IMG/VR virus record: IMGVR_UViG_3300032516_000001
Span: 124,001-188,000 of that record
Reading direction: 5' to 3' (one strand)
DNA length: 64,000 bases
In this document: in pieces, positions 7,090-51,301 of the stretch
How positions within the stretch are numbered: the stretch's first letter is position 1
Layout of the letters: the number at the start of each line of letters is the position of its first letter
Program-made: the position numbers and the translations under genes
Notes under the pieces: model-generated
The model's database searches: none
What the model was told of the DNA's origin: nothing
What the model saw: only the letters and a program-made list of their open reading frames with translations

Positions 7090-7124
7090 ATATGGATACA
7101 GTACCGAAGTTGTTCATTCCGAAG

Positions 7125-8924: not shown

Positions 8925-8957
8925 TACATAATATCACAACGTAGTGATGGACACAAT
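8911..8957 (-). promoter_or_regulatory. Perfect 17-bp inverted repeat with a TG-A-TATTAT (-10) box in its loop and the endonuclease start codon in its 3' arm
   Basis: 8911-8927 ATTGTGTCCATCACTAC is the exact reverse complement of 8941-8957 GTAGTGATGGACACAAT; 13-nt loop. Confidence 0.8.
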
Positions 8958-8964
8958 ATTAAAA

Positions 8965-9654: not shown

Positions 9655-9740
9655 ATTTTCATAAGACACAAACATTCAAAAATTAATTTATATGTAAATC
9701 AATAATATAATAAACTGATTATTTGAGTGTAATTTATCTT

Positions 9741-11956: not shown

Positions 11957-12024
11957 ATTAAATACCTTTTTCCCCTGGCCACAGATGAAGTAGCCAGGGG
12001 AAATATTGATTCATCAGTATCTGT

Positions 12025-17709: not shown

Positions 17710-18200
17710 GAATTTGTAGAATTTGTAAAGAAGAAAAATTATTAAATGAATTTTATTCACAAATTATGAAGTTGGCCAGTGGGCCGAAAAGAATGTATAG
17801 AACAGAATGCAAAAAATGCACTGATAAAACCTCAAGGAAATATCATCAAAATCATAGGGACAGAATGATATTGGATAATTCGAGAAGGGAAGACAAGAGG
17901 AATAATTTAAAAACAGAAATTACCAGAGAACAAATTTGTGAATTAATAAATAAACCATGTCATTACTGTGGAGAAACGTGCATTCCGATCGGAATCGATA
18001 GAGTCGACAATAATAAGGGCCACACCAATAATAATATTGTTTCATGTTGTATTAGATGCAATTCACTTAAAAGTGATATGCCAACACAAGCATGGATGAA
18101 GTTAGTACCCACTGTTCGAAGAATTCGAGAACTGGGATTCTTCGAACAGTGGGTTGGTCACAATCTGGGATCTAGAAAATTAGGTATCAGACATCGCTAA
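17706..18200 (+). CDS. HNH endonuclease-like protein, tandem paralog of 17239-17709
   Basis: CHYCG..IGIDRVDNNKGH..NIVSCCIRCN.LK; ATGA overlap with the preceding stop. Confidence 0.75.
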   Translation: MRICRICKEEKLLNEFYSQIMKLASGPKRMYRTECKKCTDKTSRKYHQNHRDRMILDNSRREDKRNNLKTEITREQICELINKPCHYCGETCIPIGIDRVDNNKGHTNNNIVSCCIRCNSLKSDMPTQAWMKLVPTVRRIRELGFFEQWVGHNLGSRKLGIRHR

Positions 18201-18218
18201 TACTGAACAAATGTTCAG

Positions 18219-26038: not shown

Positions 26039-27049
26039 TTAGTCATTAGGCATTTGTGACAACAAAAGAAGGCCAGTGGCTACGGCTGTTATCGGATCTT
26101 TAGCAGGCCTAATATCCGATATTTGAATCGGGAATTTATCTTTATACACATTAAATCTAGATTCAAATTTATCTACGAAACCAGCGGCCAATGAAGTTCC
26201 GCCACTTATGATTATTGGTATGGATTGAGGAACATGGATGGTATCTTTAACTTTAGCAAAATGCTTGATTATATTTTCGATTGAATAATCAATCAGACCT
26301 TGAATAAAAACTGCCAATGCTTCGACTTCACGAGATTTAGGACTGTTTATATCGGCTCCACTTTCTTTGATAGCACACATTTTAGCGGCCGTGGTATTTA
26401 CAGCCTTGGCCGCATGAATATCTATCCAGTCCCCGCCTCTGGTCAAAGAGAATTCAAGCGCATTCATCGCATTATATGATAAACAAATGTTGGTCATACC
26501 GCTTCCGAATGATATCCCAATACCAGAAAAATCTGGTATGCATTCAGAGAATATGATAGCCTGTCCTTCATTGTGAGGAGACGCATCATATCCGTTCTCT
26601 GTAATAATTTTCTTTAAGATAGCAGTATGATATGCATTAGTGGAATCAGGAACATCAATAGCCGGGGCAGGAACAGAGAAACAGCATTTTTCATTCTCAA
26701 TCTGCGGCTTACCAAGAATTTGTTGTAATATTAGAGCTATTACTTGTTGAGCATCAATTTCCCCAGGAGATATCATGCCTTTAGACAAAGGACGACGAGC
26801 TTCTCTATTAAAAAGATTAGCCGTCTCCATCGCTTCATCACCAATAATCAGTAATCTGCCATCAAATTCTACATAACTCTTCTTAGACAGTCTTAAGAGT
26901 CGTTTGTTCTCGAGCGGAAGATCGATAAAAGCGTCCCTAATCCTAATAGTCTTTACATTACCCTTGCTAGTCTCACGGGCAGAAACTATGTTCATCGTGC
27001 CGAGATCCAGCCCAACACCAAAGGTGTCATTTTCCTCAATAGTCATCAT
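26039..27049 (-). CDS. Actin-like ATPase (MreB/ParM/FtsA superfamily)
   Basis: Phosphate-1 GLDLGTMNIV, phosphate-2 GISFGSGMTN, adenosine ISGGTSL, connect-2 PITAVATG; ATG at 27049 overlaps the HNH stop (ATGA). Confidence 0.85.
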   Translation of the reverse strand: MMTIEENDTFGVGLDLGTMNIVSARETSKGNVKTIRIRDAFIDLPLENKRLLRLSKKSYVEFDGRLLIIGDEAMETANLFNREARRPLSKGMISPGEIDAQQVIALILQQILGKPQIENEKCCFSVPAPAIDVPDSTNAYHTAILKKIITENGYDASPHNEGQAIIFSECIPDFSGIGISFGSGMTNICLSYNAMNALEFSLTRGGDWIDIHAAKAVNTTAAKMCAIKESGADINSPKSREVEALAVFIQGLIDYSIENIIKHFAKVKDTIHVPQSIPIIISGGTSLAAGFVDKFESRFNVYKDKFPIQISDIRPAKDPITAVATGLLLLSQMPND

Positions 27050-27942
27050 GCGGCCTTTCGACGTTCTACTGTGCGACTTACGTGACACCAACAGCATACG
27101 ACTTCGCATTTATTCAACTCCACCATAATTCTGGACAAACTAGCCTGACTACCAATTAGATTAGAAACATTATCAAGTTTTTCATCAATGTGATCCAGAT
27201 CCATTTGCCACGGATTGAACATGTTACCACAATCGATACATGGTTTACTTTTATACTGTCTTACTAAATCTAATCGTCTAGCTCGAAATCTAGCTAAACC
27301 AGCATAATGAATACATTTTTTACACCCCGGTTTATATACTGGTCTGTGCTCCTTACATGACGTTACATATTCAGATAGTCTATCATGTGATCTATTCCTA
27401 TGACATCCAACACAAACCAAATCACATTTTTCTAATTCATTTTTCAATTTTTCAAGACTAGCAGTTGGATGATTAACTAATCTATATATATCATATATCT
27501 TATCAGTACGATGATCAAATGTCATAGCTTCTTTCTGATATACATGACCACAATCAATACAAGGATTTGATTTTATTAAAGAAACATATGCACGTTTGGC
27601 TTCCCGACAAGAAGATCTTTTTATAGAAAGTTTTTCGGCATTGGTAGCTCTGTAATTAGAATTATATAAACTTCTACACCTCTTACACATTCCCTTATTG
27701 AATTCAGTAATGTGTTTTTCTTGATTACACAAACTACATTTCTTATGATTGATATCACACCCATGCTTTAATTCATGGATTTCTATTCGTTTTTGTTCCC
27801 TTAACCCTAAGATATCACGTGATTTCCAACTATTGCAATTACATCTATGACGTTTTAAAGTCGATAGTGAACTCGCAACATAACCGCATATACACATTAA
27901 ACCAATCATATTATTTATCCTTAATTTCTTATCTTGTATCAA
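27046..27942 (-). CDS. Double-HNH homing-endonuclease-like protein
   Basis: CIDCG..MTFDH..KCDLVCVGCHR and CIDCG..MDLDH..KCEVVCCWCH. Confidence 0.78.
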   Translation of the reverse strand: MIQDKKLRINNMIGLMCICGYVASSLSTLKRHRCNCNSWKSRDILGLREQKRIEIHELKHGCDINHKKCSLCNQEKHITEFNKGMCKRCRSLYNSNYRATNAEKLSIKRSSCREAKRAYVSLIKSNPCIDCGHVYQKEAMTFDHRTDKIYDIYRLVNHPTASLEKLKNELEKCDLVCVGCHRNRSHDRLSEYVTSCKEHRPVYKPGCKKCIHYAGLARFRARRLDLVRQYKSKPCIDCGNMFNPWQMDLDHIDEKLDNVSNLIGSQASLSRIMVELNKCEVVCCWCHVSRTVERRKAA

Positions 27943-32814: not shown

Positions 32815-33240
32815 TCAGATAAGTTTTTTGGCTATACGAGCGAGATGATCTTCCCCATGATTAAGAGCGAACGCTATCGCCATGCCATCTTCTCTACGGG
32901 ATTTGGGTAAAACATGATTAATAAATTCATCTGGCGGCTTCACATCGTGTGCTTCAAGATAATGGGCGAATCCTTGAGGCCAAACATAGGTTCCATCAGA
33001 CAGGCAACATGATCCGTTTCTTTGCCCACAGAATCTGCAACTTGACCACCCACGCCATCTAGCTACAACTCTTCCCTCATTTAGGTGCTGTATTATCGCA
33101 TTACGTTCTATCTGATCCCAATTCGGATCAACAAAGTTATGTGGATCAGGTAAATCGGCTTGATGTTTATTGTACCAATAGCCGATAGCTCGCATTCCGC
33201 GAGCCTCGACCGGACTATCAGGGTGTTCGTCTAATATCAT
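32815..33240 (-). CDS. Conserved-type hypothetical metal-binding protein
   Basis: CRFCG..NGS..LSDG.Y.WP.GFAHY...H motif. Confidence 0.6.
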   Translation of the reverse strand: MILDEHPDSPVEARGMRAIGYWYNKHQADLPDPHNFVDPNWDQIERNAIIQHLNEGRVVARWRGWSSCRFCGQRNGSCCLSDGTYVWPQGFAHYLEAHDVKPPDEFINHVLPKSRREDGMAIAFALNHGEDHLARIAKKLI

Positions 33241-33548
33241 GGCGGTGGGATATTACAAACAGTTTCGATTTCTTCACACGTTGTAATTTGTGTCAAGCAA
33301 TCGGTATTCCAATATACACCGTTGTCATGCTGATAAATGCAAAATTCCTCACAGCTGATAGTCCCGCCATCAGCTGTGATCACAGGCTGAGATTCTTCAC
33401 ATGGTCCACCATCGGGGGCAATGATAGCCATGTGCGCGCAAGCTTCACCACATTTCTCAGCTCCGGGTACAGGGGTGACATGCGGCTCAGGTTCTCCGCT
33501 TCCACCACAACAACTGCAGATTATGACTAATGCCCATGCGTATTTCAT
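33237..33548 (-). CDS. Cys-rich lipoprotein
   Basis: MKYAWALVIICSCCGG signal and lipobox; regularly spaced Cys; ATGA overlap with the peptidase stop. Confidence 0.65.
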   Translation of the reverse strand: MKYAWALVIICSCCGGSGEPEPHVTPVPGAEKCGEACAHMAIIAPDGGPCEESQPVITADGGTISCEEFCIYQHDNGVYWNTDCLTQITTCEEIETVCNIPPP

Positions 33549-35528: not shown

Positions 35529-36088
35529 GGGAAATGTTTTCGTATTAGTTGCACTACTTCATCATACATCACGGGATAGAAATCCCAGGCGTCCACTCCA
35601 ACATGAATCATATTCTCGAACACCTGTTGGTTCTTGTGCGTATGACCATGGATTAAGATTTCGCCTTTCCTCCGTTCGGGTCGCTTTTCTAAAAATCTAT
35701 CATCCTCCCCTTTATTGTGTTCGACACCCGCATACGGATAATGACAAAAACGACAAATCCGACCGGCTATGGTCAAAGAGGCGCTATCCATGATTAGCGC
35801 AAAGCCTAAATCGGTCATAGACTTAACGCTTCTATCGTGGTTTCCCGGTATAAGGAATTTTATACCGTTCATCTGTCTTACAATTTCTCTGGCTCTTTCT
35901 TTATGACAGAGGAAAACGTCACCAAGCCAGAGAACGATATCGCTCATTCCTATTCGCTCATTATATCTACGGACAAGCTCCACATCCATTTCGTCAACGG
36001 AGTTAAATGGCCGATTCGCTAACTTACAAATATCCGTACGAGAGCTTTTGTGTCCAAAATGCGGATCACTATAATATGCGGTTATCAC
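35516..36088 (-). CDS. Calcineurin-like metallophosphoesterase
   Basis: SDPHFGH, LGD, GNHD and HGHTH motifs. Confidence 0.92.
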   Translation of the reverse strand: MITAYYSDPHFGHKSSRTDICKLANRPFNSVDEMDVELVRRYNERIGMSDIVLWLGDVFLCHKERAREIVRQMNGIKFLIPGNHDRSVKSMTDLGFALIMDSASLTIAGRICRFCHYPYAGVEHNKGEDDRFLEKRPERRKGEILIHGHTHKNQQVFENMIHVGVDAWDFYPVMYDEVVQLIRKHFPCPT

Positions 36089-36117
36089 AAATGACCATAC
36101 ATTCGATATTTAAAAAT

Positions 36118-36321
36118 TTACGACAACATGACCTGTAATACTATGAATTCTTCAATTGAAACAGCCCGCCTCTGGTAACAAAAACTCCCAAGACCAATAT
36201 TATCATAATCTTTGTGATCGTCACAAACTGGTATGCACTTTATCTTGGTATTAACCGGATCGATATAAAATAGTATTACTTGGGTAGCGTCATTCGCACA
36301 TACAGCCATATCACATTTCAT
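36118..36321 (-). CDS. Small Zn-finger protein, EVM-tag family
   Basis: C...VC..VCDDH; ends SIEEFIVLQVMLS. Confidence 0.7.
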   Translation of the reverse strand: MKCDMAVCANDATQVILFYIDPVNTKIKCIPVCDDHKDYDNIGLGSFCYQRRAVSIEEFIVLQVMLS

Positions 36322-36566
36322 TGAGCCATTACCTGCAAAACTTCATATTCATCAAGTGATAAATCCTGTTTGTAGGAAAAGGGCCATGGAATTTGGAAAT
36401 TCCTATGCTCATCGCATACAAAATATTGACCCCAATAAGGGCCAAGAGTCGACTCTTGTCTAAAAAAGATGACCCTTGTGACTTTGCCGTTACATTCTAC
36501 TTTTCTTCCATCCTGTGTCATTGTTGTGCACACAACATGATTTGTGTAAAAATTTATTAACTCCAT
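36318..36566 (-). CDS. Small Zn-finger protein, EVM-tag family
   Basis: VCDEH; ends SLDEYEVLQVMAQ. Confidence 0.7.
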   Translation of the reverse strand: MELINFYTNHVVCTTMTQDGRKVECNGKVTRVIFFRQESTLGPYWGQYFVCDEHRNFQIPWPFSYKQDLSLDEYEVLQVMAQ

Positions 36567-36567
36567 A

Positions 36568-36843
36568 TCATGGCATCAATCTATGTATTATCCACCAAAA
36601 TACACCATCGAATACACGAACAAATATACTAGGTTTCTTGACATCACGATCTTGAACGATTTGCTTTATTGTACGACGCTTAGCAATCCAATTGCCATAT
36701 TCTACCGGCGTCATACCAAGATATTCATATAATGTAACGTCAGATTTCTCAAATCTATCGTGCCAATTCGCAATCCACCCGTCTATATCGTCCTCATGAA
36801 GGTCGCCAAGAACATAACCTTCCATGAAAGTTGGGTGCTGCAT
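36568..36843 (-). CDS. Hypothetical protein
   Basis: DDIDGWIANWH..LYEYLGMT..EY..W pattern, common in phage small proteins. Confidence 0.65.
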   Translation of the reverse strand: MQHPTFMEGYVLGDLHEDDIDGWIANWHDRFEKSDVTLYEYLGMTPVEYGNWIAKRRTIKQIVQDRDVKKPSIFVRVFDGVFWWIIHRLMP

Positions 36844-36865
36844 AATCTAAATTTACATATAAAGT

Positions 36866-37141
36866 TTATTTCTTACACAAATCGGCACAATGATCGGCTA
36901 GGCGTTTCCCGTAATTTGGATCACCAACGATTTCACCTTTCTTAATGTCACCCTCAGTTATTGGTGGAAGATTTTGCTTGGCACGTTCTGCATTCACCGT
37001 CTCGAGCATCAATGAACGCTCATGCTTGATCCAAGCTGGAGTGTTAGTACCGTCGTCATCAATCATGTGCTGGTACTTATCACGGTCTGCGCTTGCAGTC
37101 CATAATGCGTTGTAGAATCTCGCTGATAGTATATTGTTCAT
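36866..37141 (-). CDS. Hypothetical protein
   Basis: GAGGA ribosome-binding site 4 nt before ATG 37141 (MNNILSARFYNALW...YGKRLADHCADLC). Confidence 0.6.
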   Translation of the reverse strand: MNNILSARFYNALWTASADRDKYQHMIDDDGTNTPAWIKHERSLMLETVNAERAKQNLPPITEGDIKKGEIVGDPNYGKRLADHCADLCKK

Positions 37142-37188
37142 GTGGTCCTCACTATCGTTTCTTGATTTTACCAAATGAAAGTCTAATG

Positions 37189-37194
37189 TATACT
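37189..37194 (+). promoter_or_regulatory. -10 box TATACT 5 nt before ATG
   Basis: TG-TATACT-TATTT-ATG, no Shine-Dalgarno sequence. Confidence 0.55.
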
Positions 37195-37199
37195 TATTT

Positions 37200-37667
37200 A
37201 TGCCGTTTCCGATATCCTCGACATCAGTATTTAGAATCGATCCTATATATGATGAACAAGAGCCATATATTGATAATGGACTGAATGATATACCGCATAA
37301 TATTCCAGGACTATTTATTGCTATACGTAATCCAATCATAAGACCAATCCCAATAACTTTTGATATCAAATTTCGAGGAACACGATACACGATTGTCCAT
37401 CCCAATATAGCCAAAATGATGATTAGGGCAGACAATTTCTGTAATGATTCATTCAATTTTGGTAGTATGGCCCCAATCACTACCTTTTCCCATGCATTTC
37501 CATTTGGACCAATCACAGATACCATTGACATTGACGAGAGAAAGAGAAATGAATTATTGCAAAAATTACGGAAAGACCTGAGCGATTGCTATAATGCAGG
37601 GATATCAGATAAAGAAATCCAACAGGTATGGGATTTCCAGTTAGTTGACAGTGTTCATCAGGAATAA
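37200..37667 (+). CDS. Hypothetical protein with an EVM-like C-terminus
   Basis: TG-TATACT lies 5 nt before ATG; ends QLVDSVHQE. Confidence 0.55.
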   Translation: MPFPISSTSVFRIDPIYDEQEPYIDNGLNDIPHNIPGLFIAIRNPIIRPIPITFDIKFRGTRYTIVHPNIAKMMIRADNFCNDSFNFGSMAPITTFSHAFPFGPITDTIDIDERKRNELLQKLRKDLSDCYNAGISDKEIQQVWDFQLVDSVHQE

Positions 37668-37679
37668 ATATCCAAATAC

Positions 37680-38055
37680 ACGAAAGCCACGGAATGAATT
37701 GCTCCACCCGTGGCCTCGCTGGTTCGCGGTTAAGCGAACCCGGTAGATGATGTAAACCCGAAAGCCTACTCCGCACTAGGTGCCCGCGCTACATCAACCG
37801 AAAGCGCGCTACCGTCTGAAGTGTTACCTTCACCCAAAACTAACTTGCGCCAACTTTGGGCCTTGCGGAACGGGAGCTCCAGGCAGCGTTTCCGCTGTCC
37901 TTTCCGGTTCATTGAGAACCCGAGGAAACCCCGGCCTCTCTCCACGGATGTTTACCTGGTGTTACCACCAGGAGGTTTCGGAGGGCTTGTCTCCGTACCG
38001 GTCGTTAATCCATTGCTGCATCAAACGACCGAAATTCCAGAGTCATTAAAGGCCC
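37680..38055 (-). ncRNA. Large structured non-coding RNA, class unassigned
   Basis: GC-rich island in AT-rich DNA with at least 10 stems. The minus strand shows GNRA tetraloops (GUAA, GAAA, several GCAA) and UUCG loops with G-U pairs. Overlapping ORFs have no recognisable content. Confidence 0.75.
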
Positions 38056-38056
38056 A

Positions 38057-38437
38057 TTAAATAATTGAGGATTCAATAAATTCAACAAAATCGTCCATGG
38101 TTGATAATCCAAAGCTATCTATGTCTGAATCGGTAGCTTCATCCAAATCGATAAAATCTATTTTGCCTGAATCCACCAAATCAATCAACTTCCTTATATC
38201 ATCATCACCCTGCATTTCTATAACGCTAGGATCTGATCCCGAGTAAAGTATCTGATCGAGTGTAGGGTCAATTTCAACAGAATTCCTACCATCTGATAAT
38301 TTAACAAAAGTACGTGTAATCGTCTCAGTTTTAACCTTAGACTTGGGCTTAGTAAGTAATATAGCAATTTTCTCAAGATTCATGTTGGCAACTCCGGAAG
38401 TTCGCCTGCATAGGGTGGCAATCTTATTAAGATCCAT
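38057..38437 (-). CDS. Hypothetical protein with a doubled N-terminal L..IA tag
   Basis: MDLNKIA...MNLEKIA; TATATT 5 nt before ATG. Confidence 0.65.
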   Translation of the reverse strand: MDLNKIATLCRRTSGVANMNLEKIAILLTKPKSKVKTETITRTFVKLSDGRNSVEIDPTLDQILYSGSDPSVIEMQGDDDIRKLIDLVDSGKIDFIDLDEATDSDIDSFGLSTMDDFVEFIESSII

Positions 38438-38465
38438 AACGGAATATAATACAAGAAACCTATAA

Positions 38466-38669
38466 TCAAACTCTGTCTATGTTATAAATAATTCCATAGA
38501 CACAGTCATCCTCTGGATGATACGGATAGATACTCGACATTAATACACCACATAATGGACAGTGACGTTCTAAAAGATCGAATCTCCTAGACTTAATATC
38601 CGCTATACTAATTGTAGATGTGGGAACATCAAATAAAGGAATGAAGACAAATTTGGGTTCCGGAATCAT
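38466..38669 (-). CDS. Small Zn-finger protein
   Basis: HCPLCG..HPEDDC. Confidence 0.6.
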   Translation of the reverse strand: MIPEPKFVFIPLFDVPTSTISIADIKSRRFDLLERHCPLCGVLMSSIYPYHPEDDCVYGIIYNIDRV

Positions 38670-39226
38670 GAATGGTGAACCATGAGAGAATGTATTTCAA
38701 CATCAATTTTAGATTTAATGTGTTGACTGATATCTGGTTCCAGTTCACGTTCATTTGATTTAGGCTGCCAGCATTCAATAACGCCGCACCAAATGTAACC
38801 CTTTGGAATAGCTCTCGACACATAAATCGGAGTATTCCACAATTTTCTGTTAAAATGGCCGATTAATCCACGTTTCAAGTCATTTCGATTCATGCAAGGC
38901 GTAAATTCTTTCATGTGCATTATTACCGATACATCGAACGAACTGATAGTAAATGGATCATCACCCAGAATGGATGAACAGAATTCTTCGGGTGTGGCGT
39001 CTAGTGTTGGAATCTCAGAAGGCGGCCACTCAACGGGAGGAAGTTCATAGCATAGAGACTGCCACATCTCTAATTCATAATAAGATGCTTCACGCGTTTC
39101 ACTCTTCCATCCTCTGTGTTCCGTAATATATCCGAATTTATCGATATGAAATGTTAATTGATGACGAGCAGCGACTCTATGATATTGATCCTGTTCTCGA
39201 TGTATTGGTTCTATCACGGAAAGCAT
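38666..39226 (-). CDS. Hypothetical protein
   Basis: 186-aa ORF coupled by overlap; ends DVEIHSLMVHHS. Confidence 0.6.
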   Translation of the reverse strand: MLSVIEPIHREQDQYHRVAARHQLTFHIDKFGYITEHRGWKSETREASYYELEMWQSLCYELPPVEWPPSEIPTLDATPEEFCSSILGDDPFTISSFDVSVIMHMKEFTPCMNRNDLKRGLIGHFNRKLWNTPIYVSRAIPKGYIWCGVIECWQPKSNERELEPDISQHIKSKIDVEIHSLMVHHS

Positions 39227-39243
39227 AGATCACGATACTAAGA

Positions 39244-40818
39244 CTAAAATCGATAAATATATTTGATCTTAGCCGGAATTGCAATCTTGGTCAAACCAAG
39301 CTTATCAACGTACTCACGTTCTTTTAATTTCAAATTACAAGCCTTATCATAAACAGATTTTTTGTTTATTTCATTTCCATCTTTATCAACGTAAACATAA
39401 CTAGAAGTAGTTTGACCAACTTCTTCCCAATTACTTGCTTTATATATGGTACCAACATGTCCAAATCGTGGATCGGCAAACGAAACAAGACATTTAATTT
39501 CGGGAAAAGCGCTAGACACCTTCTTAATAACTCTAGACATGAGATAAGAAGCAAAATTCTTCTTATGATAACTGGGATCAATACAGAATCTGTCTAATTC
39601 CAAGACTTCGCCATGATTTAAATCAAGTGTATGCGCTATACCTTGTCTAACAGGAGTAGCGAATTTAATAACAGCAACAACTAGTTCTTGAATTTTGGCA
39701 ACAAATATAACTTTAGATGCTCGGCCAAATCCAGCATAATGATACTTATCCAAAAATTCGGTAACATCTGGAGAATGGAGTACTTGGGAAATAACTATAG
39801 AATCAAAAGAAAAATCGATAACATCAATATTTGATCTGTTATGATAACAAACCCCATTTCCAATATACTTACTATAATTACAATTCCAGCACAAAAGCTG
39901 ATATTTTGACATTAACGATGGCTTTTTAACTAATTTTTTGTAAAGATCGATTCCAGATCCTTCACCTATCTTTCTACATGCTGAACCATCATTGTATTTA
40001 TGATCCAAAGTTAACTTATAAAGATCCTTCTCTCCACAACATACGCATTTTCCACCCAATAATGTTAAACAACTCTGTCTGAATTTATCAGTTATTATTC
40101 TACGGCAAGGCAGACATCTATTACTGCCATGAGACAACTGTGATGGGAATTCGTTAACGTCTTTTTCTTTTAAACAAATATTACAAATTTTGGTTATACC
40201 TGATGAAATAACTACTTTTAACTGATGTATTGGGTTAATTCTATATTTCTTATTATTACAATTGTGGCACAATACCTGATAACGTGTTTTATCTGACTCA
40301 CCGTTTAAAATCCTACGTTTCCAACCAAGACTGCCAAAACTACGTTCAGTATTACCATCGTTATTTACATGATCTATTGTCAGAAACTCTTTAATATCTA
40401 AACCGCATGTAACGCATTTTTGACCCAATAAATCAAGAACTTGATTAATAATTGACTGTCTGTACACTCTATGACTTTCAACTACATGTTCAGCGTTATC
40501 ATCAGTCCATTTTTTTATTCTTACCCTAATCTTATCAAGATTTTTCAATCTGTATTCTGATTTATTCTTTAGTATTGCTGCACGATTTTCTTTATAATAT
40601 TCATGTTTATCATTCAAAATTTGATCATGATTATCAGCATACCATTTCTTCCTGATAACTTTTAACTTTTCACTATTTTCTATTTCATATATTTTATTAT
40701 GTTTCTTTCTACATTCCTTACACTTTGAGTCTTTCCCGTTTTTCTTAATTGTGTTATTAAAATACTCAGAAAGCAATTTTTCAACACCACATTTAACACA
40801 AATTTGTGTTGCATCCAT
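39244..40818 (-). CDS. Double-HNH endonuclease fused to a C-terminal Mom-like (GNAT) domain
   Basis: C..CG..LTIDHVNNDG..CHNCN and C.CCG..LTLDH.YNDG..CWNCN; then LDKYHY..KFATPVR..EVLELDRFCI..SFADP..GH.GTIYKASNW. Confidence 0.78.
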   Translation of the reverse strand: MDATQICVKCGVEKLLSEYFNNTIKKNGKDSKCKECRKKHNKIYEIENSEKLKVIRKKWYADNHDQILNDKHEYYKENRAAILKNKSEYRLKNLDKIRVRIKKWTDDNAEHVVESHRVYRQSIINQVLDLLGQKCVTCGLDIKEFLTIDHVNNDGNTERSFGSLGWKRRILNGESDKTRYQVLCHNCNNKKYRINPIHQLKVVISSGITKICNICLKEKDVNEFPSQLSHGSNRCLPCRRIITDKFRQSCLTLLGGKCVCCGEKDLYKLTLDHKYNDGSACRKIGEGSGIDLYKKLVKKPSLMSKYQLLCWNCNYSKYIGNGVCYHNRSNIDVIDFSFDSIVISQVLHSPDVTEFLDKYHYAGFGRASKVIFVAKIQELVVAVIKFATPVRQGIAHTLDLNHGEVLELDRFCIDPSYHKKNFASYLMSRVIKKVSSAFPEIKCLVSFADPRFGHVGTIYKASNWEEVGQTTSSYVYVDKDGNEINKKSVYDKACNLKLKEREYVDKLGLTKIAIPAKIKYIYRF

Positions 40819-40823
40819 GTGTA

Positions 40824-40829
40824 ACTATA
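40824..40829 (-). promoter_or_regulatory. -10 box TATAGT 5 nt before ATG
   Basis: TG-TATAGT-TACAC-ATG. Confidence 0.55.
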
Positions 40830-40937
40830 CAACGAATTGGAATTCAGAAAACGTATTTGGAATTAAGAAGAGTTGTATTTGTAGCTATAAATTCAAATTG
40901 TCATTAAACCAATAACATCTGTAAGAAGTTATCTAAG

Positions 40938-41021
40938 TTTTCTGAACGTAGAAGATAATTTTCTGACCGTAGAAGGTATTTTTCTGACCGTAGAAGGTAT
41001 TTTTCTGACCGTAGAAAGTAT
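40938..41021. repeat. Four tandem 21-bp repeats (TTTTCTGACCGTAGAAGGTAT)
   Basis: Units start at 40938, 40959, 40980 and 41001; each contains the dyad TTCT-N6-AGAA. Confidence 0.92.
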
Positions 41022-41135: not shown

Positions 41136-42407
41136 TTAAACATTTACAGCCAAGAAATTTCGAACACGATCATCTAAAATTTGAAGATCATCCTTAAGTT
41201 CATGCTCCCATACAGTCAGACACTTTAGTCCAACCTCATTCCACTGATTGATAATCTTTCGCGCATGAACCTTGTTGCTTTCGCCAGTTTTATCTTTCCC
41301 GTGCCAATAATCACCAAGAATTTCAACGACATGAGTCACGCGTTTGAAAGATGGAGACCCGTCTTGTTTCGGATAAACAGGAAAACAAAAATCCGGATTT
41401 CGATTGTTCTGAACGGATGGAATAAGCTTCCAGAAACTCCCATTGCCAGAGAAACAAAAGAATGGGTATAACTTATTAAATGCCAACTCGGGCTTATTCG
41501 GACCAGCACGACGCGAATGCTCCAAATGCTTACGCGCATACTCCGGGTTCATCATCGGATGAGGCACACCATATTTCTTCATACATGTAGATCGGTACGA
41601 TTCTTCATTATGGGTCAAACTGTAAATCAAACGATTACTCTCAATGGACATAAATCGTCTTAGTGATTCATTCATCGATGATTTGGTCTTAGAGTCCTGA
41701 GTAGTCCACTCAACCCCGTAACGCACCAGATTAGTTTGTTTGATTTTTTCTTGGACTTCTGGCGCTTGCGCTGGGTCCGGTACACCGAATTGGGCGATAT
41801 TGGTTTGACGCCCCTTCTCACGAATTTCTGGAACTCGTAACGTTTGTTCATCACCATAACGCTCGAGATTGGTGGCGAGTTGTTTGGCCCTGATCTCAGG
41901 AACTTGAGACGGATTCTCTACACCGTATTTCTCAAGGTTTGTTTGACGAATCTTTTCCTTTATTTCGGGACGCGCAAAATTGTCCTTCGGGAGATGTGCG
42001 GTTCTATCTTTCCCGTCCCAATGTGATTGGACCTGTTTGTATAGAGTGGACTTCTTACAGAACACATTCTCGGCGCCATAACGTTCCGTTATTGTGGCCG
42101 CTTTCTTCTCAGCAGCACCCGGCACCATCAAAGCGTTTGTAACATCGTCCCCGTATTTCTTCTGGAATGTTGATTTGATCCGTTCAAGAGCAACGGCATT
42201 CTTATCTCTTGACTGCCAAGCCTGACAGTCTTTCCTATGGCGTTTCATCTGAGTCAGAGATGTGCTTTTATGACCGCAGAGACACGCTAACGGTTTTCTA
42301 TCTGGATTTGCTGCTAAAAACTCAGGGCACTTACGTTTATGTCCCGAAGTTACCGGCCTATCAAATTCTTTTCCACAGAATTCGCAATGAAAACTCACAA
42401 TCATCAT
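41136..42407 (-). CDS. Homing-endonuclease-like protein with KYGV..P repeats and a C-terminal Vsr/PD-(D/E)XK-like nuclease
   Basis: About 7 repeats of the (K/R)YG.EN..Q.PEI type; NPDF..VEILGDYWHG..CLTVWEHE. Confidence 0.75.
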   Translation of the reverse strand: MMIVSFHCEFCGKEFDRPVTSGHKRKCPEFLAANPDRKPLACLCGHKSTSLTQMKRHRKDCQAWQSRDKNAVALERIKSTFQKKYGDDVTNALMVPGAAEKKAATITERYGAENVFCKKSTLYKQVQSHWDGKDRTAHLPKDNFARPEIKEKIRQTNLEKYGVENPSQVPEIRAKQLATNLERYGDEQTLRVPEIREKGRQTNIAQFGVPDPAQAPEVQEKIKQTNLVRYGVEWTTQDSKTKSSMNESLRRFMSIESNRLIYSLTHNEESYRSTCMKKYGVPHPMMNPEYARKHLEHSRRAGPNKPELAFNKLYPFFCFSGNGSFWKLIPSVQNNRNPDFCFPVYPKQDGSPSFKRVTHVVEILGDYWHGKDKTGESNKVHARKIINQWNEVGLKCLTVWEHELKDDLQILDDRVRNFLAVNV

Positions 42408-47062: not shown

Positions 47063-47867
47063 TATCGGTCAAAATTTTCATGATATTCAAATTGAATTCT
47101 GGATCATATCTCCAATCGATAGTATTATTTACAAAGGAATGGATTACTTCTGATAATGGTAACGGTGAAGAAAATTCTATAGAGTTATTTAATTTCAAAC
47201 TTGGTATTAATCCATCATACATTATATATCCATCACTACCAATTACAGAAAATTTCCTTTCTTTACAGTTATGTCCGTTTCCAACTTTGATTGTGGCGTG
47301 AATCCCAACGAAATCTAACTCTAGAATATATATCTCTCCAGGATTTTTCTCCTCTTTAGTAATCTTAATTGAGTTTGGATAATTTTTAGTAACTCCAAAA
47401 CACATAGATAAATCATGTGGACCATAATCCAAAAGCGAAGAATATTCGCGGAACGGACCATGATTTAAACCGAATGATTCGATATTGAATGGGTGCTCCC
47501 AATTGGAAACCATGCTTCGTAATGCAACATAAGCCGGCGAAAATAGATGAGTATTATCAATTAAAATAGTTGTATTCTGCCTCTGCGCAGTATTAAAAAT
47601 AGCTTCGGCATCTCCTAGAGTCTCAGCGACTGGCTTTTCAAGTAGAACCGGTATCCCAGCCTCAAGAAAATGAGTGGCTATTTCCCAGTGAGTTGACGGC
47701 GGAGTAGCTATTATTACTTTATCTATTTTAGATATAATTTCACGGTAATCTGTAATCGGTCCCGTCTTGTCACATATAGCTACAAGCTCGGCGCTCGGGA
47801 CAGATTCGATAGTCTTTATGTAGTTCCTGCCCCAGGCCCCACACCCGACTAACCCCAATCTAATCAT
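47055..47867 (-). CDS. Gfo/Idh/MocA family oxidoreductase
   Basis: GLVGCGAWG, IATPPSTH, VLLEKP. Confidence 0.9.
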   Translation of the reverse strand: MIRLGLVGCGAWGRNYIKTIESVPSAELVAICDKTGPITDYREIISKIDKVIIATPPSTHWEIATHFLEAGIPVLLEKPVAETLGDAEAIFNTAQRQNTTILIDNTHLFSPAYVALRSMVSNWEHPFNIESFGLNHGPFREYSSLLDYGPHDLSMCFGVTKNYPNSIKITKEEKNPGEIYILELDFVGIHATIKVGNGHNCKERKFSVIGSDGYIMYDGLIPSLKLNNSIEFSSPLPLSEVIHSFVNNTIDWRYDPEFNLNIMKILTDIK

Positions 47868-50800
47868 TCAGCATATGCTTTTTCAGCCCATTTGAAGAAA
47901 CGGGTTAATCCCTCTCGTAATGAAATTTTCGGATTATATCCAATTTGACTCTGGGCTTTCGTGATATCTGGACAACGTCGATTCGGTTCATCAGCCGGAT
48001 AACTATCAGGATATTCGGCCACGTTATATTCTATTTTTCTATCCAATGCTCTTTCGATTTCTTTCACTAAATCAAGCACAGATATTTCGGGAGTTGGATT
48101 CCCAATATTATATGGTTCGCCAGGTACGCCATTAACCAACACCTGTAAGAACCCACGGATTGCATCCGTAGCATAACAGAACGTCCTGGTTTGATTACCA
48201 GTTCCATAAACTTGCAGAGGTTTCTTCTCTAAAACTTTGGCTCCAAAATTTGGCAAAACACGATAATCAGTCTTCTGCATACCCGGTCCATAACAATTAT
48301 GACACATGATTCCTAAATCGCCCCCAAAGAAATTTTCTGTTCCGGGAACCGTAAAATCATACACAAAACCATCAATGGTTTTGCGATCAATAGACTTAAT
48401 CTCCGCAAAAGCAATATCAGCATGGACGTCACTCCCATTCCTAGGAGAAAGCTCATGAAGTTTATCCACTTCAGTACCATTTACACCATGAACCTCAATT
48501 CGATGAGCCGTGACATAATTCTTGTGTTTGGCTGCTCTTGTTCTAAATGAGTGGACCGAACCAAGAAGCCCGAGGCGAAGAAGAAGAGCATTTAACCCCT
48601 GAATTACACCCCAATTTGAGTTATTAAAAAGAATAAACTTCCCAGTTGTTTTCGCGTCATGATTTCCATCCCCACACCAGAATCCATGAAGAAATTTTGA
48701 TATTCTATGTTTCGGTAATTTTAATACCCATCCTGGGACACACTTTGAACTTCCAGCCCCAGCCATGCCAAAGCTCTTGAAAAGTTCAACAAGGACTCTA
48801 GAATGAATAATCATAATAGGCGTTTTTGTCCTATCGATATTAATTAACGAATTTATACCAAATAACTCTTTAATGATGCGCGCCACTTTATCTAAATATT
48901 TTTTGTGTTTATCTGAATATTCAAGAGAATAAGATCCACCACTGTCACAAACATGACCATCAGCTAGGGTGTAGCCAAATAACCACAAAAGACTGTCAAT
49001 ATCCGAAATATAGTTACTGATAAATTTATCCGAACTTCTATAACATACAGATTCTTCCTTCACATGAGGAATTGATGCTGATTTAAAAATCCCAGCCGGA
49101 ATCCTATCATTTGAATCCCATTTTAAACAATTAGCAGAAAATAACCTTGATGCGACTCCGTAATCACCCGCTGCCTTTCTAAGAATGGGCGGACGGGATA
49201 AAATGACTTCTCTAATTACTTCCGAACGAAGAGATAAACCTTCATTTGGGATTTTGTCGGAAATGAAAAATGGAAGAAGATCGCTCTCTGGGATAGGCAA
49301 ACTCCGCGGAATCACGATTTTGTCACCAACATTCAAATCCTTCCCAGCTACAGCTCTGATTTCTCCATTTATAAAACGAAAAAGGTCATGATCCTCTGTA
49401 ACGGTAATAGACCTGCCCCACTTAGTATGGAAAGTAATAACTTCTTCGTTTACTTTGCGTCGAAGAATGGCCGATATAGAACGCATTATCACTCGCCCAT
49501 CAGTATTAAAAGACGGGACGGTAACTCCACCAGGAGATCCCCCAGTACGTTCATAGCACTTTTCAAAGCTTTCAAATAATAACTCTCCATCCTTTTCATA
49601 TAAAACTTTTTGATCCCCAGTCAAACAATTGAATGGACGGACTATCTTACCCTGCACCCCATAATGTTCATGGAAGATTTGAACAAGCGTCTCCCCCAAT
49701 CGCTTGCTTTCATCATAACAATTGCCGCACCAGACAGCTTTCCCATTACGACGAACACATATGATGTGGTTTTTCACATTGACACAATAAACACGCCCAT
49801 CATATTCATAACGTTTAATATTAGTTATTTTAGCATATCTCGGGCGTCTAATATTTACATGATAAAGACCTCTGACTGACTGACTTATGCAAGCAGCGTA
49901 ACCAACTCGTAGTGCTAATTCTTGTACATCATCAGCAAGTTTCTTAGACTTAGTGTAATAGATTATATGACCACCTTTCCTACCATTTTTTGCTTTTTTA
50001 ACGGTTCCATCTCCTAGTACCAAAGCATCAAGCAAAATTTTAGATTGACGAGGTGACAAATTCATATACTCACGTGGTACATATTTATCACCAGCTTTAC
50101 CAAGCGGTTTTAATAAATTAACCAAAAATTTACTACAAATTCTAAATTGATGATGATCTGAATCCATGTAATTTATACCGATACGATCCAGACAAGCAGA
50201 TATTTTTTTACGACCTTCAAGTTTAACTTGTGATATCAAGATATAATATCTTGATACATCATAAATTTTTCCATCTTCACTCATTTTAACAAAATGACAT
50301 CCACTCCGCTTTTCTTTGGTTTTTCTAGTATAAGCGCATCCTTCTGATATATAATAACCAAGAAATTCAAGCCAGTCATCCATACTTATTTTCTTCAAAT
50401 CTGGCCTAAATCGAGACGGATTTTCACTGAATTCCATCCATTTTTTCTCCGCTCCAGTAAAATTGGCCCCGGTCGGCACCCCCCAAGAGGGGCCGTATTT
50501 GATGTTACCAGCTTTGATAAATCGAAATTTCCCTATTTTATCTTTGACATATAAATTGTGATCTGGCGTAACATTTAAATCTGTTACTGTGCTAGAAAAT
50601 TGAACCATGTCACCTTTATGTTTGTACTCGATATATTCAGTCGGAACGTGATATTCAACTATTCCTTCAGGATTAAGTGTAGCAACACTAATTTCTTTTG
50701 TTAGTTTAGAAAACGATTCCCATCCGTTCTCAGTTAAAATCTCAGTTTTGTCGTCGTAACATGCCCGTTTGCCAAGAGAACTGACATTACCCCAATAGCT

Positions 50801-51301
50801 TTCAGCCGTCGGAACCCGTTTTGGATCCGGGTCCCCATAAATTTCACTGGAGCTAAAGAAAAGCAACTTAGCATTCGGTTGCCTTTTAGCTAATTCCAAA
50901 ACATTCGTTAACCCGGTGGTAGCGACCTGCAACGTCTCTAATGGGTATCTCCGATAATAGTAAGGACTGGCTATGCCGGCTGCATGTATTACAAAGTCCA
51001 CCGGTCTTTCTGGATAAAATGGTTTAATTATATCATGTTCAACAAATGCCATGTCCCGCGAAATAGGAACATCCTTACCTTTTTCGCCAGCAGTAATGAA
51101 ATTATCTAAAACAATGAGTTCACATAGCGGTTTCCCATTATCCCAGAATAAATTTTTGTTCAAATAAATAAAGACATCGCTGAAATATCTGCCGAGGAAC
51201 CCACGCCCACCGGTTATGAGTATTCTCTTTCCCGAGAACTCCCAAGCGAGATCGCCCAGGCTCTCAGCAATTTCTTCTATATCACTCTTCAATAAAAACA
51301 T
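47864..51301 (-). CDS. NAD-dependent epimerase/dehydratase (UDP-glucuronate decarboxylase-like) containing two inteins
   Basis: TGGRGFLG, HAAGIASP..Y, SSSEIYGDP, YWGNV..RA|CYDESKRLGE, RPFN|CYGP; the spliced product would be 354 aa. Confidence 0.9.
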   Translation of the reverse strand: MFLLKSDIEEIAESLGDLAWEFSGKRILITGGRGFLGRYFSDVFIYLNKNLFWDNGKPLCELIVLDNFITAGEKGKDVPISRDMAFVEHDIIKPFYPERPVDFVIHAAGIASPYYYRRYPLETLQVATTGLTNVLELAKRQPNAKLLFFSSSEIYGDPDPKRVPTAESYWGNVSSLGKRACYDDKTEILTENGWESFSKLTKEISVATLNPEGIVEYHVPTEYIEYKHKGDMVQFSSTVTDLNVTPDHNLYVKDKIGKFRFIKAGNIKYGPSWGVPTGANFTGAEKKWMEFSENPSRFRPDLKKISMDDWLEFLGYYISEGCAYTRKTKEKRSGCHFVKMSEDGKIYDVSRYYILISQVKLEGRKKISACLDRIGINYMDSDHHQFRICSKFLVNLLKPLGKAGDKYVPREYMNLSPRQSKILLDALVLGDGTVKKAKNGRKGGHIIYYTKSKKLADDVQELALRVGYAACISQSVRGLYHVNIRRPRYAKITNIKRYEYDGRVYCVNVKNHIICVRRNGKAVWCGNCYDESKRLGETLVQIFHEHYGVQGKIVRPFNCLTGDQKVLYEKDGELLFESFEKCYERTGGSPGGVTVPSFNTDGRVIMRSISAILRRKVNEEVITFHTKWGRSITVTEDHDLFRFINGEIRAVAGKDLNVGDKIVIPRSLPIPESDLLPFFISDKIPNEGLSLRSEVIREVILSRPPILRKAAGDYGVASRLFSANCLKWDSNDRIPAGIFKSASIPHVKEESVCYRSSDKFISNYISDIDSLLWLFGYTLADGHVCDSGGSYSLEYSDKHKKYLDKVARIIKELFGINSLINIDRTKTPIMIIHSRVLVELFKSFGMAGAGSSKCVPGWVLKLPKHRISKFLHGFWCGDGNHDAKTTGKFILFNNSNWGVIQGLNALLLRLGLLGSVHSFRTRAAKHKNYVTAHRIEVHGVNGTEVDKLHELSPRNGSDVHADIAFAEIKSIDRKTIDGFVYDFTVPGTENFFGGDLGIMCHNCYGPGMQKTDYRVLPNFGAKVLEKKPLQVYGTGNQTRTFCYATDAIRGFLQVLVNGVPGEPYNIGNPTPEISVLDLVKEIERALDRKIEYNVAEYPDSYPADEPNRRCPDITKAQSQIGYNPKISLREGLTRFFKWAEKAYAE
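48296..49627 (-). mobile_element. Intein 2 (444 aa) with a LAGLIDADG endonuclease
   Basis: Starts CLTGDQKV; TEDHDL; LFGYTLADG and FLHGFWCGDG; ends VYDFTV..IMCHN; +1 residue is Cys. Confidence 0.92.
49721..50761 (-). mobile_element. Intein 1 (347 aa) with a LAGLIDADG endonuclease
   Basis: Starts CYDDKTEILTENGW; block B TPDHNL; LAGLIDADG helices FLGYYISEG and LLDALVLGDG; ends VWCGN; +1 residue is Cys. Confidence 0.9.

What the first reader, a model, noticed from the sequence alone, without database searches (positions are those of the whole stretch)
37680..38055. Unassigned ~375-nt highly structured RNA in the accessory region
Seen: a GC-rich island on the minus strand, running from the stop of 38057-38437 to the convergent gene. 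The 5' GGCCUUU (38054-38048) can pair with AGAGGCC (37939-37933) and close a multi-loop domain. That domain contains CGGUCGUU/AACGACCG (38031-37999, apical GCAA), GGAG/CUCC and CCUGGUG-GUAA-CACCAGG (37972-37955). Further stems follow: CAGCG-GAAA-CGCUG (37897-37884); a 12-bp CCCAAAGUUGGC-GCAA-GUUAGUUUUGGG stem (37860-37833); and a CGGUAG/CUACCG domain (37814-37741) with a UUCG loop and a 7-nt UGAUGUA/UACAUCA complement that could be a pseudoknot. It ends with GGUUCGC/GCGAACC and a 12-bp GCAA-capped hairpin (37714-37686). GNRA/UUCG loops and G-U pairs all favour the same strand. Established: this density of GNRA loops is typical of large folded RNAs (RNase P, self-splicing introns, and phage-borne orphan classes such as GOLLD and ROOL). 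I could not find the core signatures of RNase P, tmRNA, or group I/II introns. Inference: a new or highly diverged ribozyme or scaffold RNA.
Basis: partly seen in the sequence, partly recalled or inferred. Interest (0 to 1): 0.88.

Follow-up and report, generated by a model that had tools for sequence, protein, structure and literature searches.

The report
Orphan 377-nt structured RNA, huge phage
A huge uncultivated phage carries a 377-base, GC-rich, non-coding stretch that folds into about a dozen very stable hairpins on one strand. It matches no known RNA family, but no relatives could be found, so its function stays untested.

Summary
Window 38056-37680 (minus strand) is 55% GC in a 40% GC phage. 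It has stops in all six frames, and no gene was called there on the independent assemblies that span the region. It folds far better than shuffles on the minus strand (z -5.9, against -2.8 on the plus strand). GNRA-capped hairpins are strongly enriched: 3-5 seen, against a mean of 0.1 and a maximum of 2 in 1000 shuffles.

It matches none of the 4227 Rfam models, even at E<=10, and it is not a tRNA or tmRNA. The intron reading fails because the upstream ORF ends at its own stop and is an 18-codon remnant in a strain variant.

No homologue was found anywhere. Only near-identical copies from the same phage population turned up. One variant carries two substitutions, and both become G.U wobbles on the minus strand. 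Covariation therefore cannot be tested.

Best reading, at moderate confidence: a genuine, independently folding non-coding RNA, made as the tail of an operon of small orphan genes and ended by its own terminator-like hairpin, that acts through its fold. A ribozyme or scaffold role is unsupported, not refuted. It is a credible candidate for a new large RNA class, but so far a singleton.

The parts
37680..38056 (-). The whole structured RNA element, 377 nt. RNA position 1 = window 38056.
   Evidence: GC 55.4% against 40.2%. MFE z -5.9 on the minus strand and -2.8 on the plus strand. Stops in all six frames. No gene called here on the assemblies that span it. No Pfam hit for the overlapping ORFs. 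The 89-aa overlapping ORF has 0 hits among 1.84 billion protein representatives.
38049..38056 (-). 5' strand (UGGGCCUU) of the candidate long-range closing helix. It pairs with AAGGCCCA at 37864-37857.
Evidence: Pair probability 0.92 in the 377-nt ensemble.
37999..38031 (-). H1: CGGUCGUU...AACGACCG hairpin with an apical GCAA.
   Evidence: -14.5 kcal/mol folded alone. P 0.86. The A51G change in L007 turns U33-A51 into a U.G wobble.
37979..37995 (-). Hc: CGGAG/CUCCG hairpin with a 7-nt loop, ACAAGCC.
   Evidence: P 0.94.
37955..37972 (-). H2: CCUGGUG-GUAA-CACCAGG.
   Evidence: P 1.00. -12.0 kcal/mol.
37935..37954 (-). Purine-rich segment of about 20 nt, UAAACAUCCGUGGAGAGAGG, mostly unpaired in the predictions.
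   Evidence: Unpaired-probability profile. It can form 9 bp with the 5' arm of the terminal hairpin, but that fold is 22 kcal/mol worse than the MFE.
37906..37920 (-). Hf: GGUUC-UCAAU-GAACC. It has an alternative, CCGGGG-UUU-CCUCGG, at 37934-37920.
   Evidence: P 0.58 and 0.42 for the two alternatives.
37881..37901 (-). H3: AGG-A-CAGCG-GAAA-CGCUG-CCU.
   Evidence: P 1.00 and 0.92. -11.4 kcal/mol.
37867..37880 (-). Hh: GGAGC-UCCC-GUUCC.
   Evidence: P 0.96.
37832..37861 (-). H4: 13-bp hairpin GCCCAAAGUUGGC-GCAA-GUUAGUUUUGGGU, with several G.U pairs.
   Evidence: It forms in the fold that includes flanks (-13.1 kcal/mol). Its base competes with the closing helix.
37818..37831 (-). Hk: GAAG-GUAACA-CUUC.
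   Evidence: (P 0.82).
37741..37814 (-). 3' multi-helix domain closed by CGGUAG/CUACCG. The alternative is a long hairpin that uses UGAUGUAG/UUACAUCA.
   Evidence: Two competing folds. -25.9 kcal/mol folded alone.
37721..37740 (-). H6: GGUUCGC-UUAACC-GCGAACC.
   Evidence: P 1.00.
37680..37719 (-). H7: terminal GCAA-capped hairpin of about 17 bp, followed by the U-rich tail UUUCGUGUAUUU. A terminator-like 3' end.
   Evidence: -22.0 kcal/mol. The U tract is interrupted and the consensus scan does not call it, so termination is inferred, not shown.
38057..38383 (-). Upstream gene, 108 aa with an acidic C-terminus. Its stop codon abuts the RNA. The 126-aa ORF reaching 38437 is probably a remnant fused to this gene.
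   Evidence: P0002, the 108-aa form, is called on two assemblies. It belongs to a paralogue family that starts MNLxKIAILLT. No Pfam, PHROG or PADLOC family.
37532..37679 (-). 148-nt AT-rich spacer between the RNA and the next start codon.
   Evidence: Identical in all copies.
36866..37531 (-). Downstream 221-aa orphan gene with hydrophobic N-terminal segments.
   Evidence: Called on every assembly. Only identical copies exist among 5.8 billion protein clusters. Its codon score is positive along its length, while the overlapping + ORF 37200-37667 scores like an antisense shadow.

Best explanation
This is a genuine non-coding RNA element of about 377 nt, read from the minus strand of a huge (241-323 kb) uncultivated phage.

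Shown: it is non-coding, strand-specific, and far more stable and richer in GNRA loops than chance allows.

Inferred, production: it is transcribed as the 3' extension of the operon of small orphan genes that ends at 38057. No promoter is recognisable in front of it, and the stop codon abuts its first base. It ends at its own strong terminal hairpin with a U-rich tail (37719-37680).

Inferred, action: it folds into about eleven local hairpins. Five are capped by GNRA loops, which can dock into helices and compact the RNA. It then works as a stable folded RNA, binding a protein or another RNA in trans during infection, rather than as a message or as a simple terminator. It belongs to no described RNA family.
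For: GC island: 55.4% against 40.2%. In AT-rich genomes, long GC-rich intergenic regions are the established hunting ground for structured ncRNAs (PMC8723152 abstract).

Stability: MFE z -5.9 and -5.75 on the minus strand against -2.8 on the plus strand. 15 of 111 hairpin pairs are G.U.

Tetraloops: 3-5 GNRA-capped hairpins, against a mean of 0.10 and a maximum of 2 in 1000 shuffles, and none on the plus strand.

Hairpin certainty: H2, H3 and H6 have pair probability 1.00.

Not coding: stops in all frames, codon scores at or below zero, no gene called on the assemblies that span it, no Pfam hit, and 0 hits for the longest overlapping ORF among 1.84 billion representatives.

Variation: the only two substitutions seen in the population (C17U and A51G in L007) both convert a Watson-Crick pair into a G.U wobble on the minus strand. 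They would break the pairs on the plus strand.

Context: in L007 the upstream genes are replaced or diverged, yet the RNA is kept intact from its first bases.

Size: at 377 nt with about eleven hairpins, it is far larger than a terminator or a typical leader needs to be.
Against: No homologue was found, so there is no covariation and no evidence of purifying selection. The RNA lies in a block that is 100% identical among strains for about 5 kb, so its conservation says nothing.

Two wobble-compatible substitutions out of two have a chance probability of about 0.25.

There are no expression data and the transcript ends are unknown. The U tract after the last hairpin is imperfect, and the terminator scan did not call it.

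The long-range architecture is ambiguous, with several folds within about 2 kcal/mol of each other.

No partner protein gene is recognisable nearby.

A string of stable hairpins could serve a purely cis role.
Confidence: 0.4

Rival explanations
1. A cis-acting 3'-UTR or intergenic element. The array of stable hairpins ends the upstream operon, protects its mRNA against 3'-to-5' exonucleases, and insulates it from the downstream 221-aa gene. It has no function of its own as a free RNA.
For: It starts at the stop codon of the upstream gene and ends in a strong hairpin followed by a U-rich tail. No promoter-like site was found in front of it. GNRA and UUCG loops are also common on plain stabilising hairpins (established knowledge). 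The architecture is mostly hairpins in a row, and the long-range helices are uncertain.
Against: Eleven hairpins over 377 nt is far more than termination or protection needs. Other gene junctions in this window use single perfect palindromes instead. A roughly 20-nt unpaired purine-rich segment and multi-helix junctions have no obvious role in a mere barrier.
Confidence: 0.25
2. A cis-regulatory leader (riboswitch-, attenuator- or protein-binding type) for the downstream 221-aa membrane-protein gene. The terminal hairpin would be a conditional terminator.
For: The element lies upstream of, and on the same strand as, 36866-37531 and ends in a terminator-like hairpin. Competing alternative helices exist: the closing helix against the base of H4, and two folds of the 3' domain. 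The segment 37954-37935 can form 9 bp with the 5' arm of the terminal hairpin.
Against: The forced antiterminator fold is 22 kcal/mol worse than the MFE. A 9-bp complement is expected by chance in a sequence of this size (my own estimate, not a tool result). No known aptamer model matches, even at E<=10. 148 nt separate the hairpin from the start codon. 377 nt is larger than nearly all known leaders.
Confidence: 0.1
3. A ribozyme: a self-splicing group I-like intron or intron relic, or a self-cleaving RNA.
For: The size and GNRA-loop density resemble group I introns (established knowledge). The phage is crowded with selfish elements: a DUF7487 and a GIY-YIG homing endonuclease, three HNH/zinc-finger-Mom fusions, and a LAGLIDADG intein.
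Against: There is no hit to any intron or self-cleaving ribozyme model at E<=10. The upstream ORF ends at its own stop codon and is only an 18-codon remnant in L007 while the RNA is intact, so there is no exon 1 to rejoin. No minus-strand reading frame with coding signal continues after the element before 37531. The identical block in L007 runs on for more than 1 kb past the 3' end, so there is no mobile-element boundary there.
Confidence: 0.08
4. Not a functional RNA. Either a recently acquired GC-rich fragment or decaying relic whose structure is incidental, or a DNA-level site (a recombination or packaging signal).
For: It is a singleton, with no homologue in any collection. Its base composition is foreign to the genome. 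A mosaic recombination boundary lies within about 10 nt of its 5' end, and assemblies break inside it.
Against: The strand asymmetry (33.7 kcal/mol, 15 G.U pairs) and the GNRA enrichment are RNA-level signatures that an arbitrary GC-rich fragment would not show. There are no terminal inverted or direct repeats. No coding remnant is detectable. The hairpins are still perfect, including stems of 7 and 13 bp.
Confidence: 0.17

Closest known systems
GOLLD and ROOL (large ornate RNAs of phages and prophages; Rfam families)
   Same: Encoded by a phage. Several hundred nucleotides long, with many hairpins. No protein partner known and function unknown. Both classes are described as phage- or prophage-encoded RNAs of unknown function (PMC12286853).
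   Different: No match to either covariance model, even at E<=10. 377 nt, against more than 800 nt for many GOLLD RNAs (PMC12286853). Those classes often lie near tRNA islands, but this 64-kb window has no tRNA. No evidence here for pseudoknots or oligomerisation.
Group I self-splicing introns of phages
   Same: Size range, GNRA-capped peripheral hairpins, and residence in a genome full of homing endonucleases and an intein.
   Different: No CM match. No interrupted gene: the upstream ORF has its own stop codon and is a remnant in L007. No recognisable P3-P8/P7 core when read by eye against recalled features (a lead, not a test).
Bacterial RNase P RNA
   Same: Similar length (E. coli M1 RNA is about 377 nt, from memory). 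A multi-domain, GNRA-containing fold.
   Different: No hit to any RNase P model. The universally conserved P4 sequences, recalled from memory, are not seen in the sequence.
Structured ncRNAs found as long GC-rich intergenic regions in AT-rich genomes (the GC-IGR/DIMPL approach)
   Same: It has exactly the signature that approach exploits: a long intergenic region much richer in GC than the genome (PMC8723152 abstract).
   Different: Those candidates become classes only after homologues show covariation. Here none could be collected.
Guide or scaffold RNAs of mobile elements and retroelements (IscB/TnpB omega-RNA including HEARO, IS110 bridge RNA, retron and DRT ncRNAs)
   Same: A highly structured RNA of 150-400 nt in a region rich in mobile nuclease genes.
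   Different: Each of these needs an adjacent IscB, TnpB, IS110 recombinase or reverse transcriptase gene. None is detected within about 5 kb. The HEARO model does not match.

Membership tests
Any Rfam 15 family (4227 covariance models) | A score at or above the family's gathering threshold, or at least a marginal E-value | tested here: not met
   0 hits at gathering thresholds in the whole window. Only chance snoRNA/lncRNA hits in the flanking coding sequence at E 1-6. 0 hits at E<=10 on 37670-38065.
tRNA / tmRNA | Cloverleaf, or a tRNA-like domain plus a tag reading frame | tested here: not met
   ARAGORN found 0 genes in the window.
Group I intron | Interrupts a gene whose exons join into one reading frame or one RNA | tested here: not met
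   The upstream ORF ends at its own TAA and is an 18-codon remnant in L007 while the RNA is intact. There is no coding signal on the minus strand between 37680 and 37531.
Group I intron | Conserved catalytic core (P3-P8 pseudoknot, P7 guanosine site) recognised by the family model | tested here: not met
   No Intron_gpI hit at E<=10.
Group I intron | GTP-dependent self-splicing | not testable with these tools
   Needs an in-vitro assay.
RNase P RNA | Match to the bacterial or archaeal RNase P models, which include the conserved P4 core | tested here: not met
   No hit.
GOLLD / ROOL | Match to the family model | tested here: not met
   No hit.
GOLLD / ROOL | Frequent location next to phage tRNA islands (PMC12286853) | tested here: not met
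   No tRNA in 64 kb. This is a tendency of those families, not a strict criterion.
Riboswitch / transcription attenuator | A known aptamer, plus mutually exclusive terminator and antiterminator folds of comparable energy | tested here: not met
   No aptamer model matches. The only antiterminator candidate costs 22 kcal/mol. An unknown aptamer cannot be excluded.
Intrinsic terminator (3' hairpin only) | A GC-rich stem immediately followed by a U tract | tested here: inconclusive
   The stem is strong, at -22 kcal/mol. The tail UUUCGUGUAUUU is interrupted, and the consensus scan did not call the site.
Omega-RNA, bridge RNA, retron or DRT ncRNA | An adjacent gene for IscB, TnpB, an IS110 recombinase or a reverse transcriptase | tested here: not met
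   Pfam, PHROG and PADLOC scans of the neighbouring genes found only HNH-Mom, a DUF7487 homing endonuclease, a phosphoesterase, LRV and orphans.
Protein-coding gene | An open frame with coding statistics or homologues | tested here: not met
   Stops in all six frames. Codon scores at or below zero. No Pfam hit for four overlapping ORFs. 0 hits for the 89-aa ORF among 1.84 billion representatives.
Conserved structured RNA (generic criterion) | Compensatory base changes among homologues | not testable with these tools
   No diverged homologue could be retrieved. Only two substitutions are known, and both are wobble-compatible.

The most novel reading that the evidence does not exclude
The element is the founding member of a new class of large (about 380 nt) phage-encoded folded RNA, comparable in rank to ROOL or GOLLD. 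It would act through a compact tertiary structure held together by GNRA loops, binding a host or phage factor, self-assembling, or catalysing a reaction during infection by a huge phage.
Probability: 0.35. Interest if true: 0.78.

Novelty: categorically new. Interest (0 to 1): 0.55.

Why it matters
Large structured non-coding RNAs are rare in bacteria and phages. The few known classes turned out to have elaborate functions or architectures: ribozymes, RNP scaffolds, and the RNA-only cages of ROOL and GOLLD (PMC12286853). A further class carried by a huge phage would add to that short list and give a new object for RNA structure work. It would also suggest that the accessory regions of huge phages hide RNA-based functions that protein-centred annotation misses. 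The weak point is that this is a singleton. Without relatives or expression data it remains a well-founded candidate, not a demonstrated functional RNA. 'Categorically new' here means only that no known family or system fits.

Tried and rejected
Known families. Rfam at gathering thresholds and at E<=10 gave nothing, and ARAGORN found nothing.

Other GC islands in the window. 11968-12402 is a collagen-like repeat CDS and 33240-33545 is a small lipoprotein CDS. Both are ordinary coding sequence, and the RNA has no paralogue in the window.

Sequence homologues. blastn against 50,697 phage records found nothing at E<=1e-5 and only 23-31-nt chance hits at E<=10. Megablast with the 16-kb neighbourhood found nothing. 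blastn against 72,556 plasmids found nothing.

Synteny route.
- The flanking proteins of 126/108 aa and 221 aa have only identical copies among 5.8 billion protein clusters.
- The 186-aa protein has relatives at about 50% identity only on high-GC contigs that carry no RNA homologue.
- The search for related loci in IMG/VR, run with four queries (three neighbouring proteins and the paralogue alignment), returned the source contig and two unrelated phages.

Pattern scans with loops fixed and stems degenerate. IMG/VR returned only the source contig. JGI metagenomes returned the source contig and L007. GTDB genomes returned two chance matches whose stems are not complementary. An exact 27-mer scan missed even the source contig because the word straddles the end of a stored chunk.

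Nearest sequenced relative. I fetched all of LR745208.1 (485 kb, 55% GC, proteins 25-49% identical, with syntenic blocks either side of the RNA's position). nhmmer and three single-sequence covariance models (R1-R3) found nothing credible. The best hit, 15 bits in L032, had many broken pairs.

Selection from strain variation. Rejected, because divergence is mosaic (blocks at 0% or 10-15%) and the RNA sits in an identical block.

Other readings rejected.
- Terminator/antiterminator switch: 22 kcal/mol penalty.
- Mobile element with terminal repeats: none found.
- CsrB-like sponge: counting by eye, 10 GGA motifs against about 7 expected, mostly inside stems.
- Defence-system context: no PADLOC hits.

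Full report
WHAT IS THERE. The window is part of IMGVR_UViG_3300032516_000001, a 241,648-bp phage contig. The same genome appears as a 323,057-bp ENA contig. On the minus strand, the stop codon of a small gene (38057-38059) is followed directly by 377 nt (38056-37680). This stretch is 55.4% GC in a window of 40.2% GC. All six frames carry 2-8 stop codons, and codon-usage scores are at or below zero in every frame. No gene is called there on any of the independently assembled contigs that span it. The four ORFs that overlap it have no Pfam match. The longest of them, 89 aa on the plus strand, has no relative among 1.84 billion protein representatives. The other GC-rich islands of the window are ordinary coding sequence: a collagen-like repeat gene and a small lipoprotein gene. 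This is therefore the one non-coding GC island in 64 kb.

IS THE STRUCTURE MORE THAN CHANCE? Yes.
- The minus strand folds to -165.6 kcal/mol, with z -5.88 against 100 dinucleotide shuffles and z -5.75 against 1000. The plus strand reaches only -131.9 kcal/mol, with z -2.81.
- The asymmetry comes from 15 G.U pairs among the 111 pairs of the local hairpins.
H2, H3 and H6 have pair probability 1.00.
- The MFE fold has three GNRA-capped hairpins with stems of at least 3 bp. A fourth GCAA sits on a short apical stem, and a fifth (H4) appears in the equally stable fold. In 1000 shuffles the mean was 0.10 and the maximum 2, and the plus strand has none.
- Two qualifications apply. In 200-nt windows corrected for GC the region scores z -2.7 to -3.0, among the best but behind two perfect-palindrome sites at 8780-9100 and 18100-18160. 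The long-range architecture is also open. The ensemble prefers a closing helix between positions 1-8 and 193-200 (P 0.92).

SURROUNDINGS. All genes here run on the minus strand.
- Upstream lies a gene called as 126 aa. It is more likely 108 aa (38383-38057), because that form is called on two assemblies and the first 18 codons look like the fused start and end of a lost paralogue.
- That gene belongs to a small family that begins MNLxKIAILLT. The variant contig L007 carries two other members and an 18-codon remnant in its place.
- Further upstream are a 67-aa and a 186-aa orphan, an HNH/zinc-finger-Mom fusion, and a DUF7487 homing endonuclease.
- Downstream, after a 148-nt AT-rich spacer, comes a 221-aa orphan with hydrophobic N-terminal segments (36866-37531). 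Every assembly calls this gene.
- No reverse transcriptase, IscB/TnpB, IS110 recombinase, Cas or defence-system protein is detectable nearby.
- No sigma-70-like promoter precedes the element. The terminal hairpin (-22 kcal/mol) is followed by UUUCGUGUAUUU, a plausible but imperfect terminator that the consensus scan did not call.

KNOWN FAMILIES. Rfam 15 gives nothing at gathering thresholds in the whole window and nothing at E<=10 on the element. The marginal snoRNA hits lie in the upstream coding sequence and are chance. ARAGORN finds no tRNA or tmRNA in 64 kb. The intron idea is tempting because the phage is crowded with homing endonucleases, Mom fusions and an intein. It fails on the defining point. 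The upstream ORF ends at its own stop codon and is a mere remnant in L007 while the RNA is intact. No coding frame continues after the element either.

SEARCH FOR RELATIVES. This was the main effort, and it was negative.
- blastn found nothing in the phage or plasmid collections.
- The two flanking proteins exist only as identical copies among 5.8 billion protein clusters.
- The 186-aa protein has only relatives at about 50% identity, on high-GC contigs with no RNA homologue.
- Protein-anchored scans of IMG/VR returned the source contig only.
- DNA patterns with fixed loops and degenerate stems returned only the source and L007 in IMG/VR and the JGI metagenomes, and two chance hits in GTDB genomes.
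- The nearest sequenced relative I could identify is the 485-kb 'uncultured phage' LR745208.1. It is 55% GC, shares proteins at 25-49% identity, and has syntenic blocks on both sides of the RNA's position. I fetched it whole and searched it with nhmmer and three single-sequence covariance models. No credible hit resulted.

POPULATION VARIATION. More than eight contigs from ENA, JGI and Logan samples carry the locus.
- The RNA is identical in all but L007, which has C17U and A51G. Both changes turn a Watson-Crick pair into a G.U wobble on the minus strand, and both would give A.C mismatches on the plus strand.
- That outcome is consistent with an RNA on the minus strand, but two of two has a chance probability of about 0.25.
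- Strain divergence is mosaic: blocks at 0% alternate with blocks at 10-15%. The RNA lies in an identical block about 5 kb long, so its conservation carries no weight.
- A mosaic boundary lies within about 10 nt of the RNA's 5' end in L007.
- Two assemblies of one sample break at RNA positions 52 and 192, exactly one 141-mer apart. This implies further variants that I could not retrieve.

HOW IT MOST LIKELY WORKS.
- Shown: a non-coding, strand-specific, unusually stable and GNRA-rich fold.
- Inferred: it is transcribed as the tail of the small-gene operon and ended by its own hairpin. It then acts as a stable folded RNA in trans (confidence 0.4).
- Rival, pure cis 3'-UTR stabiliser, terminator or insulator (0.25). 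It fits the position, but is out of proportion to the eleven hairpins and the junctions.
- Rival, leader or attenuator for the 221-aa gene (0.1). The only antiterminator pairing costs 22 kcal/mol.
- Rival, ribozyme or intron (0.08). There is no core match and no exons.
- Rival, non-functional or DNA-level sequence (0.17). This is favoured by singleton status but contradicted by the RNA-specific signatures.

NOVELTY AND VERDICT. Nothing known fits, and in that sense it is categorically new. The claim rests on one sequence. Its interpretation is partly supported: an unassigned structured RNA, yes; a ribozyme or scaffold, untested; the convergent gene and the pseudoknot, doubtful. Interest is moderate to high (0.55). 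A validated new class of large phage RNA would be notable, given what ROOL and GOLLD turned out to be (PMC12286853). For now the decisive tests have still to be done: covariation in homologues, expression, probing, and activity.

Noticed in passing
window 8780-9100 (minus strand): Perfect palindromic hairpins of 19-20 bp between the zinc-finger/Mom fusion gene 7125-8924 and gene 8965-9675. MFE z is -6.5. These are symmetric inverted repeats, unlike the finding. They are probably terminators or endonuclease-associated palindromes.
   Followed up: partly
window 18100-18160: A 20-bp perfect palindrome (CCCACUGUUCGAAGAAUUC...) at the junction of the convergent genes 17679-18200(+) and 18219-22922(-). 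Probably a bidirectional terminator. z is -6.0 for 18040-18260.
   Followed up: partly
window 11968-12402: The GC-richest stretch of the window (up to 68%) is a collagen-like Gly-X-Y repeat coding sequence ([12 protein letters not shown]...), not an RNA.
   Followed up: yes
window 7125-8924, 9723-11345(+), 39244-40818: Three genes fuse a zinc-finger or HNH-like nuclease N-terminus to a Mom-like GNAT domain. Together with a GIY-YIG gene (23065-24396), a DUF7487 homing endonuclease (41136-42407) and a LAGLIDADG intein inside an epimerase (47864-51301), this is an unusually high load of selfish elements.
   Followed up: partly
window 26039-27109: A Volactin-family actin homologue (Pfam E 1.5e-65). 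A 49%-identical copy occurs in the 485-kb uncultured huge phage LR745208.1, which shares syntenic blocks with this window.
   Followed up: partly
window 38057-38437; L007 145-817: A tandem family of small paralogues that begin MNLxKIAILLT lies just upstream of the RNA. The 126-aa ORF looks like a deletion remnant fused to a 108-aa gene. Strain L007 has two different paralogues and an 18-codon remnant there.
   Followed up: partly
L002-L009 against the window (about 36000-41000): Strain variation is mosaic: blocks with 0% divergence alternate with blocks at 10-15%. Assemblies of one sample break inside the RNA at positions 52 and 192, one 141-mer apart, which points to unseen variants.
   Followed up: partly
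window 36866-37531(-) against 37200-37667(+): These are two overlapping ORFs on opposite strands. Every assembly calls the minus-strand 221-aa gene, and the plus-strand ORF scores like an antisense shadow. The 'convergent gene' of the finding is therefore probably not real.
   Followed up: partly
The DNA search: An exact 27-mer from the RNA found nothing in viral contigs, not even the source contig. The reason appears to be that the word straddles the end of a stored chunk (locus L017 ends at 7112). Negative pattern scans therefore have small blind spots.
   Followed up: yes
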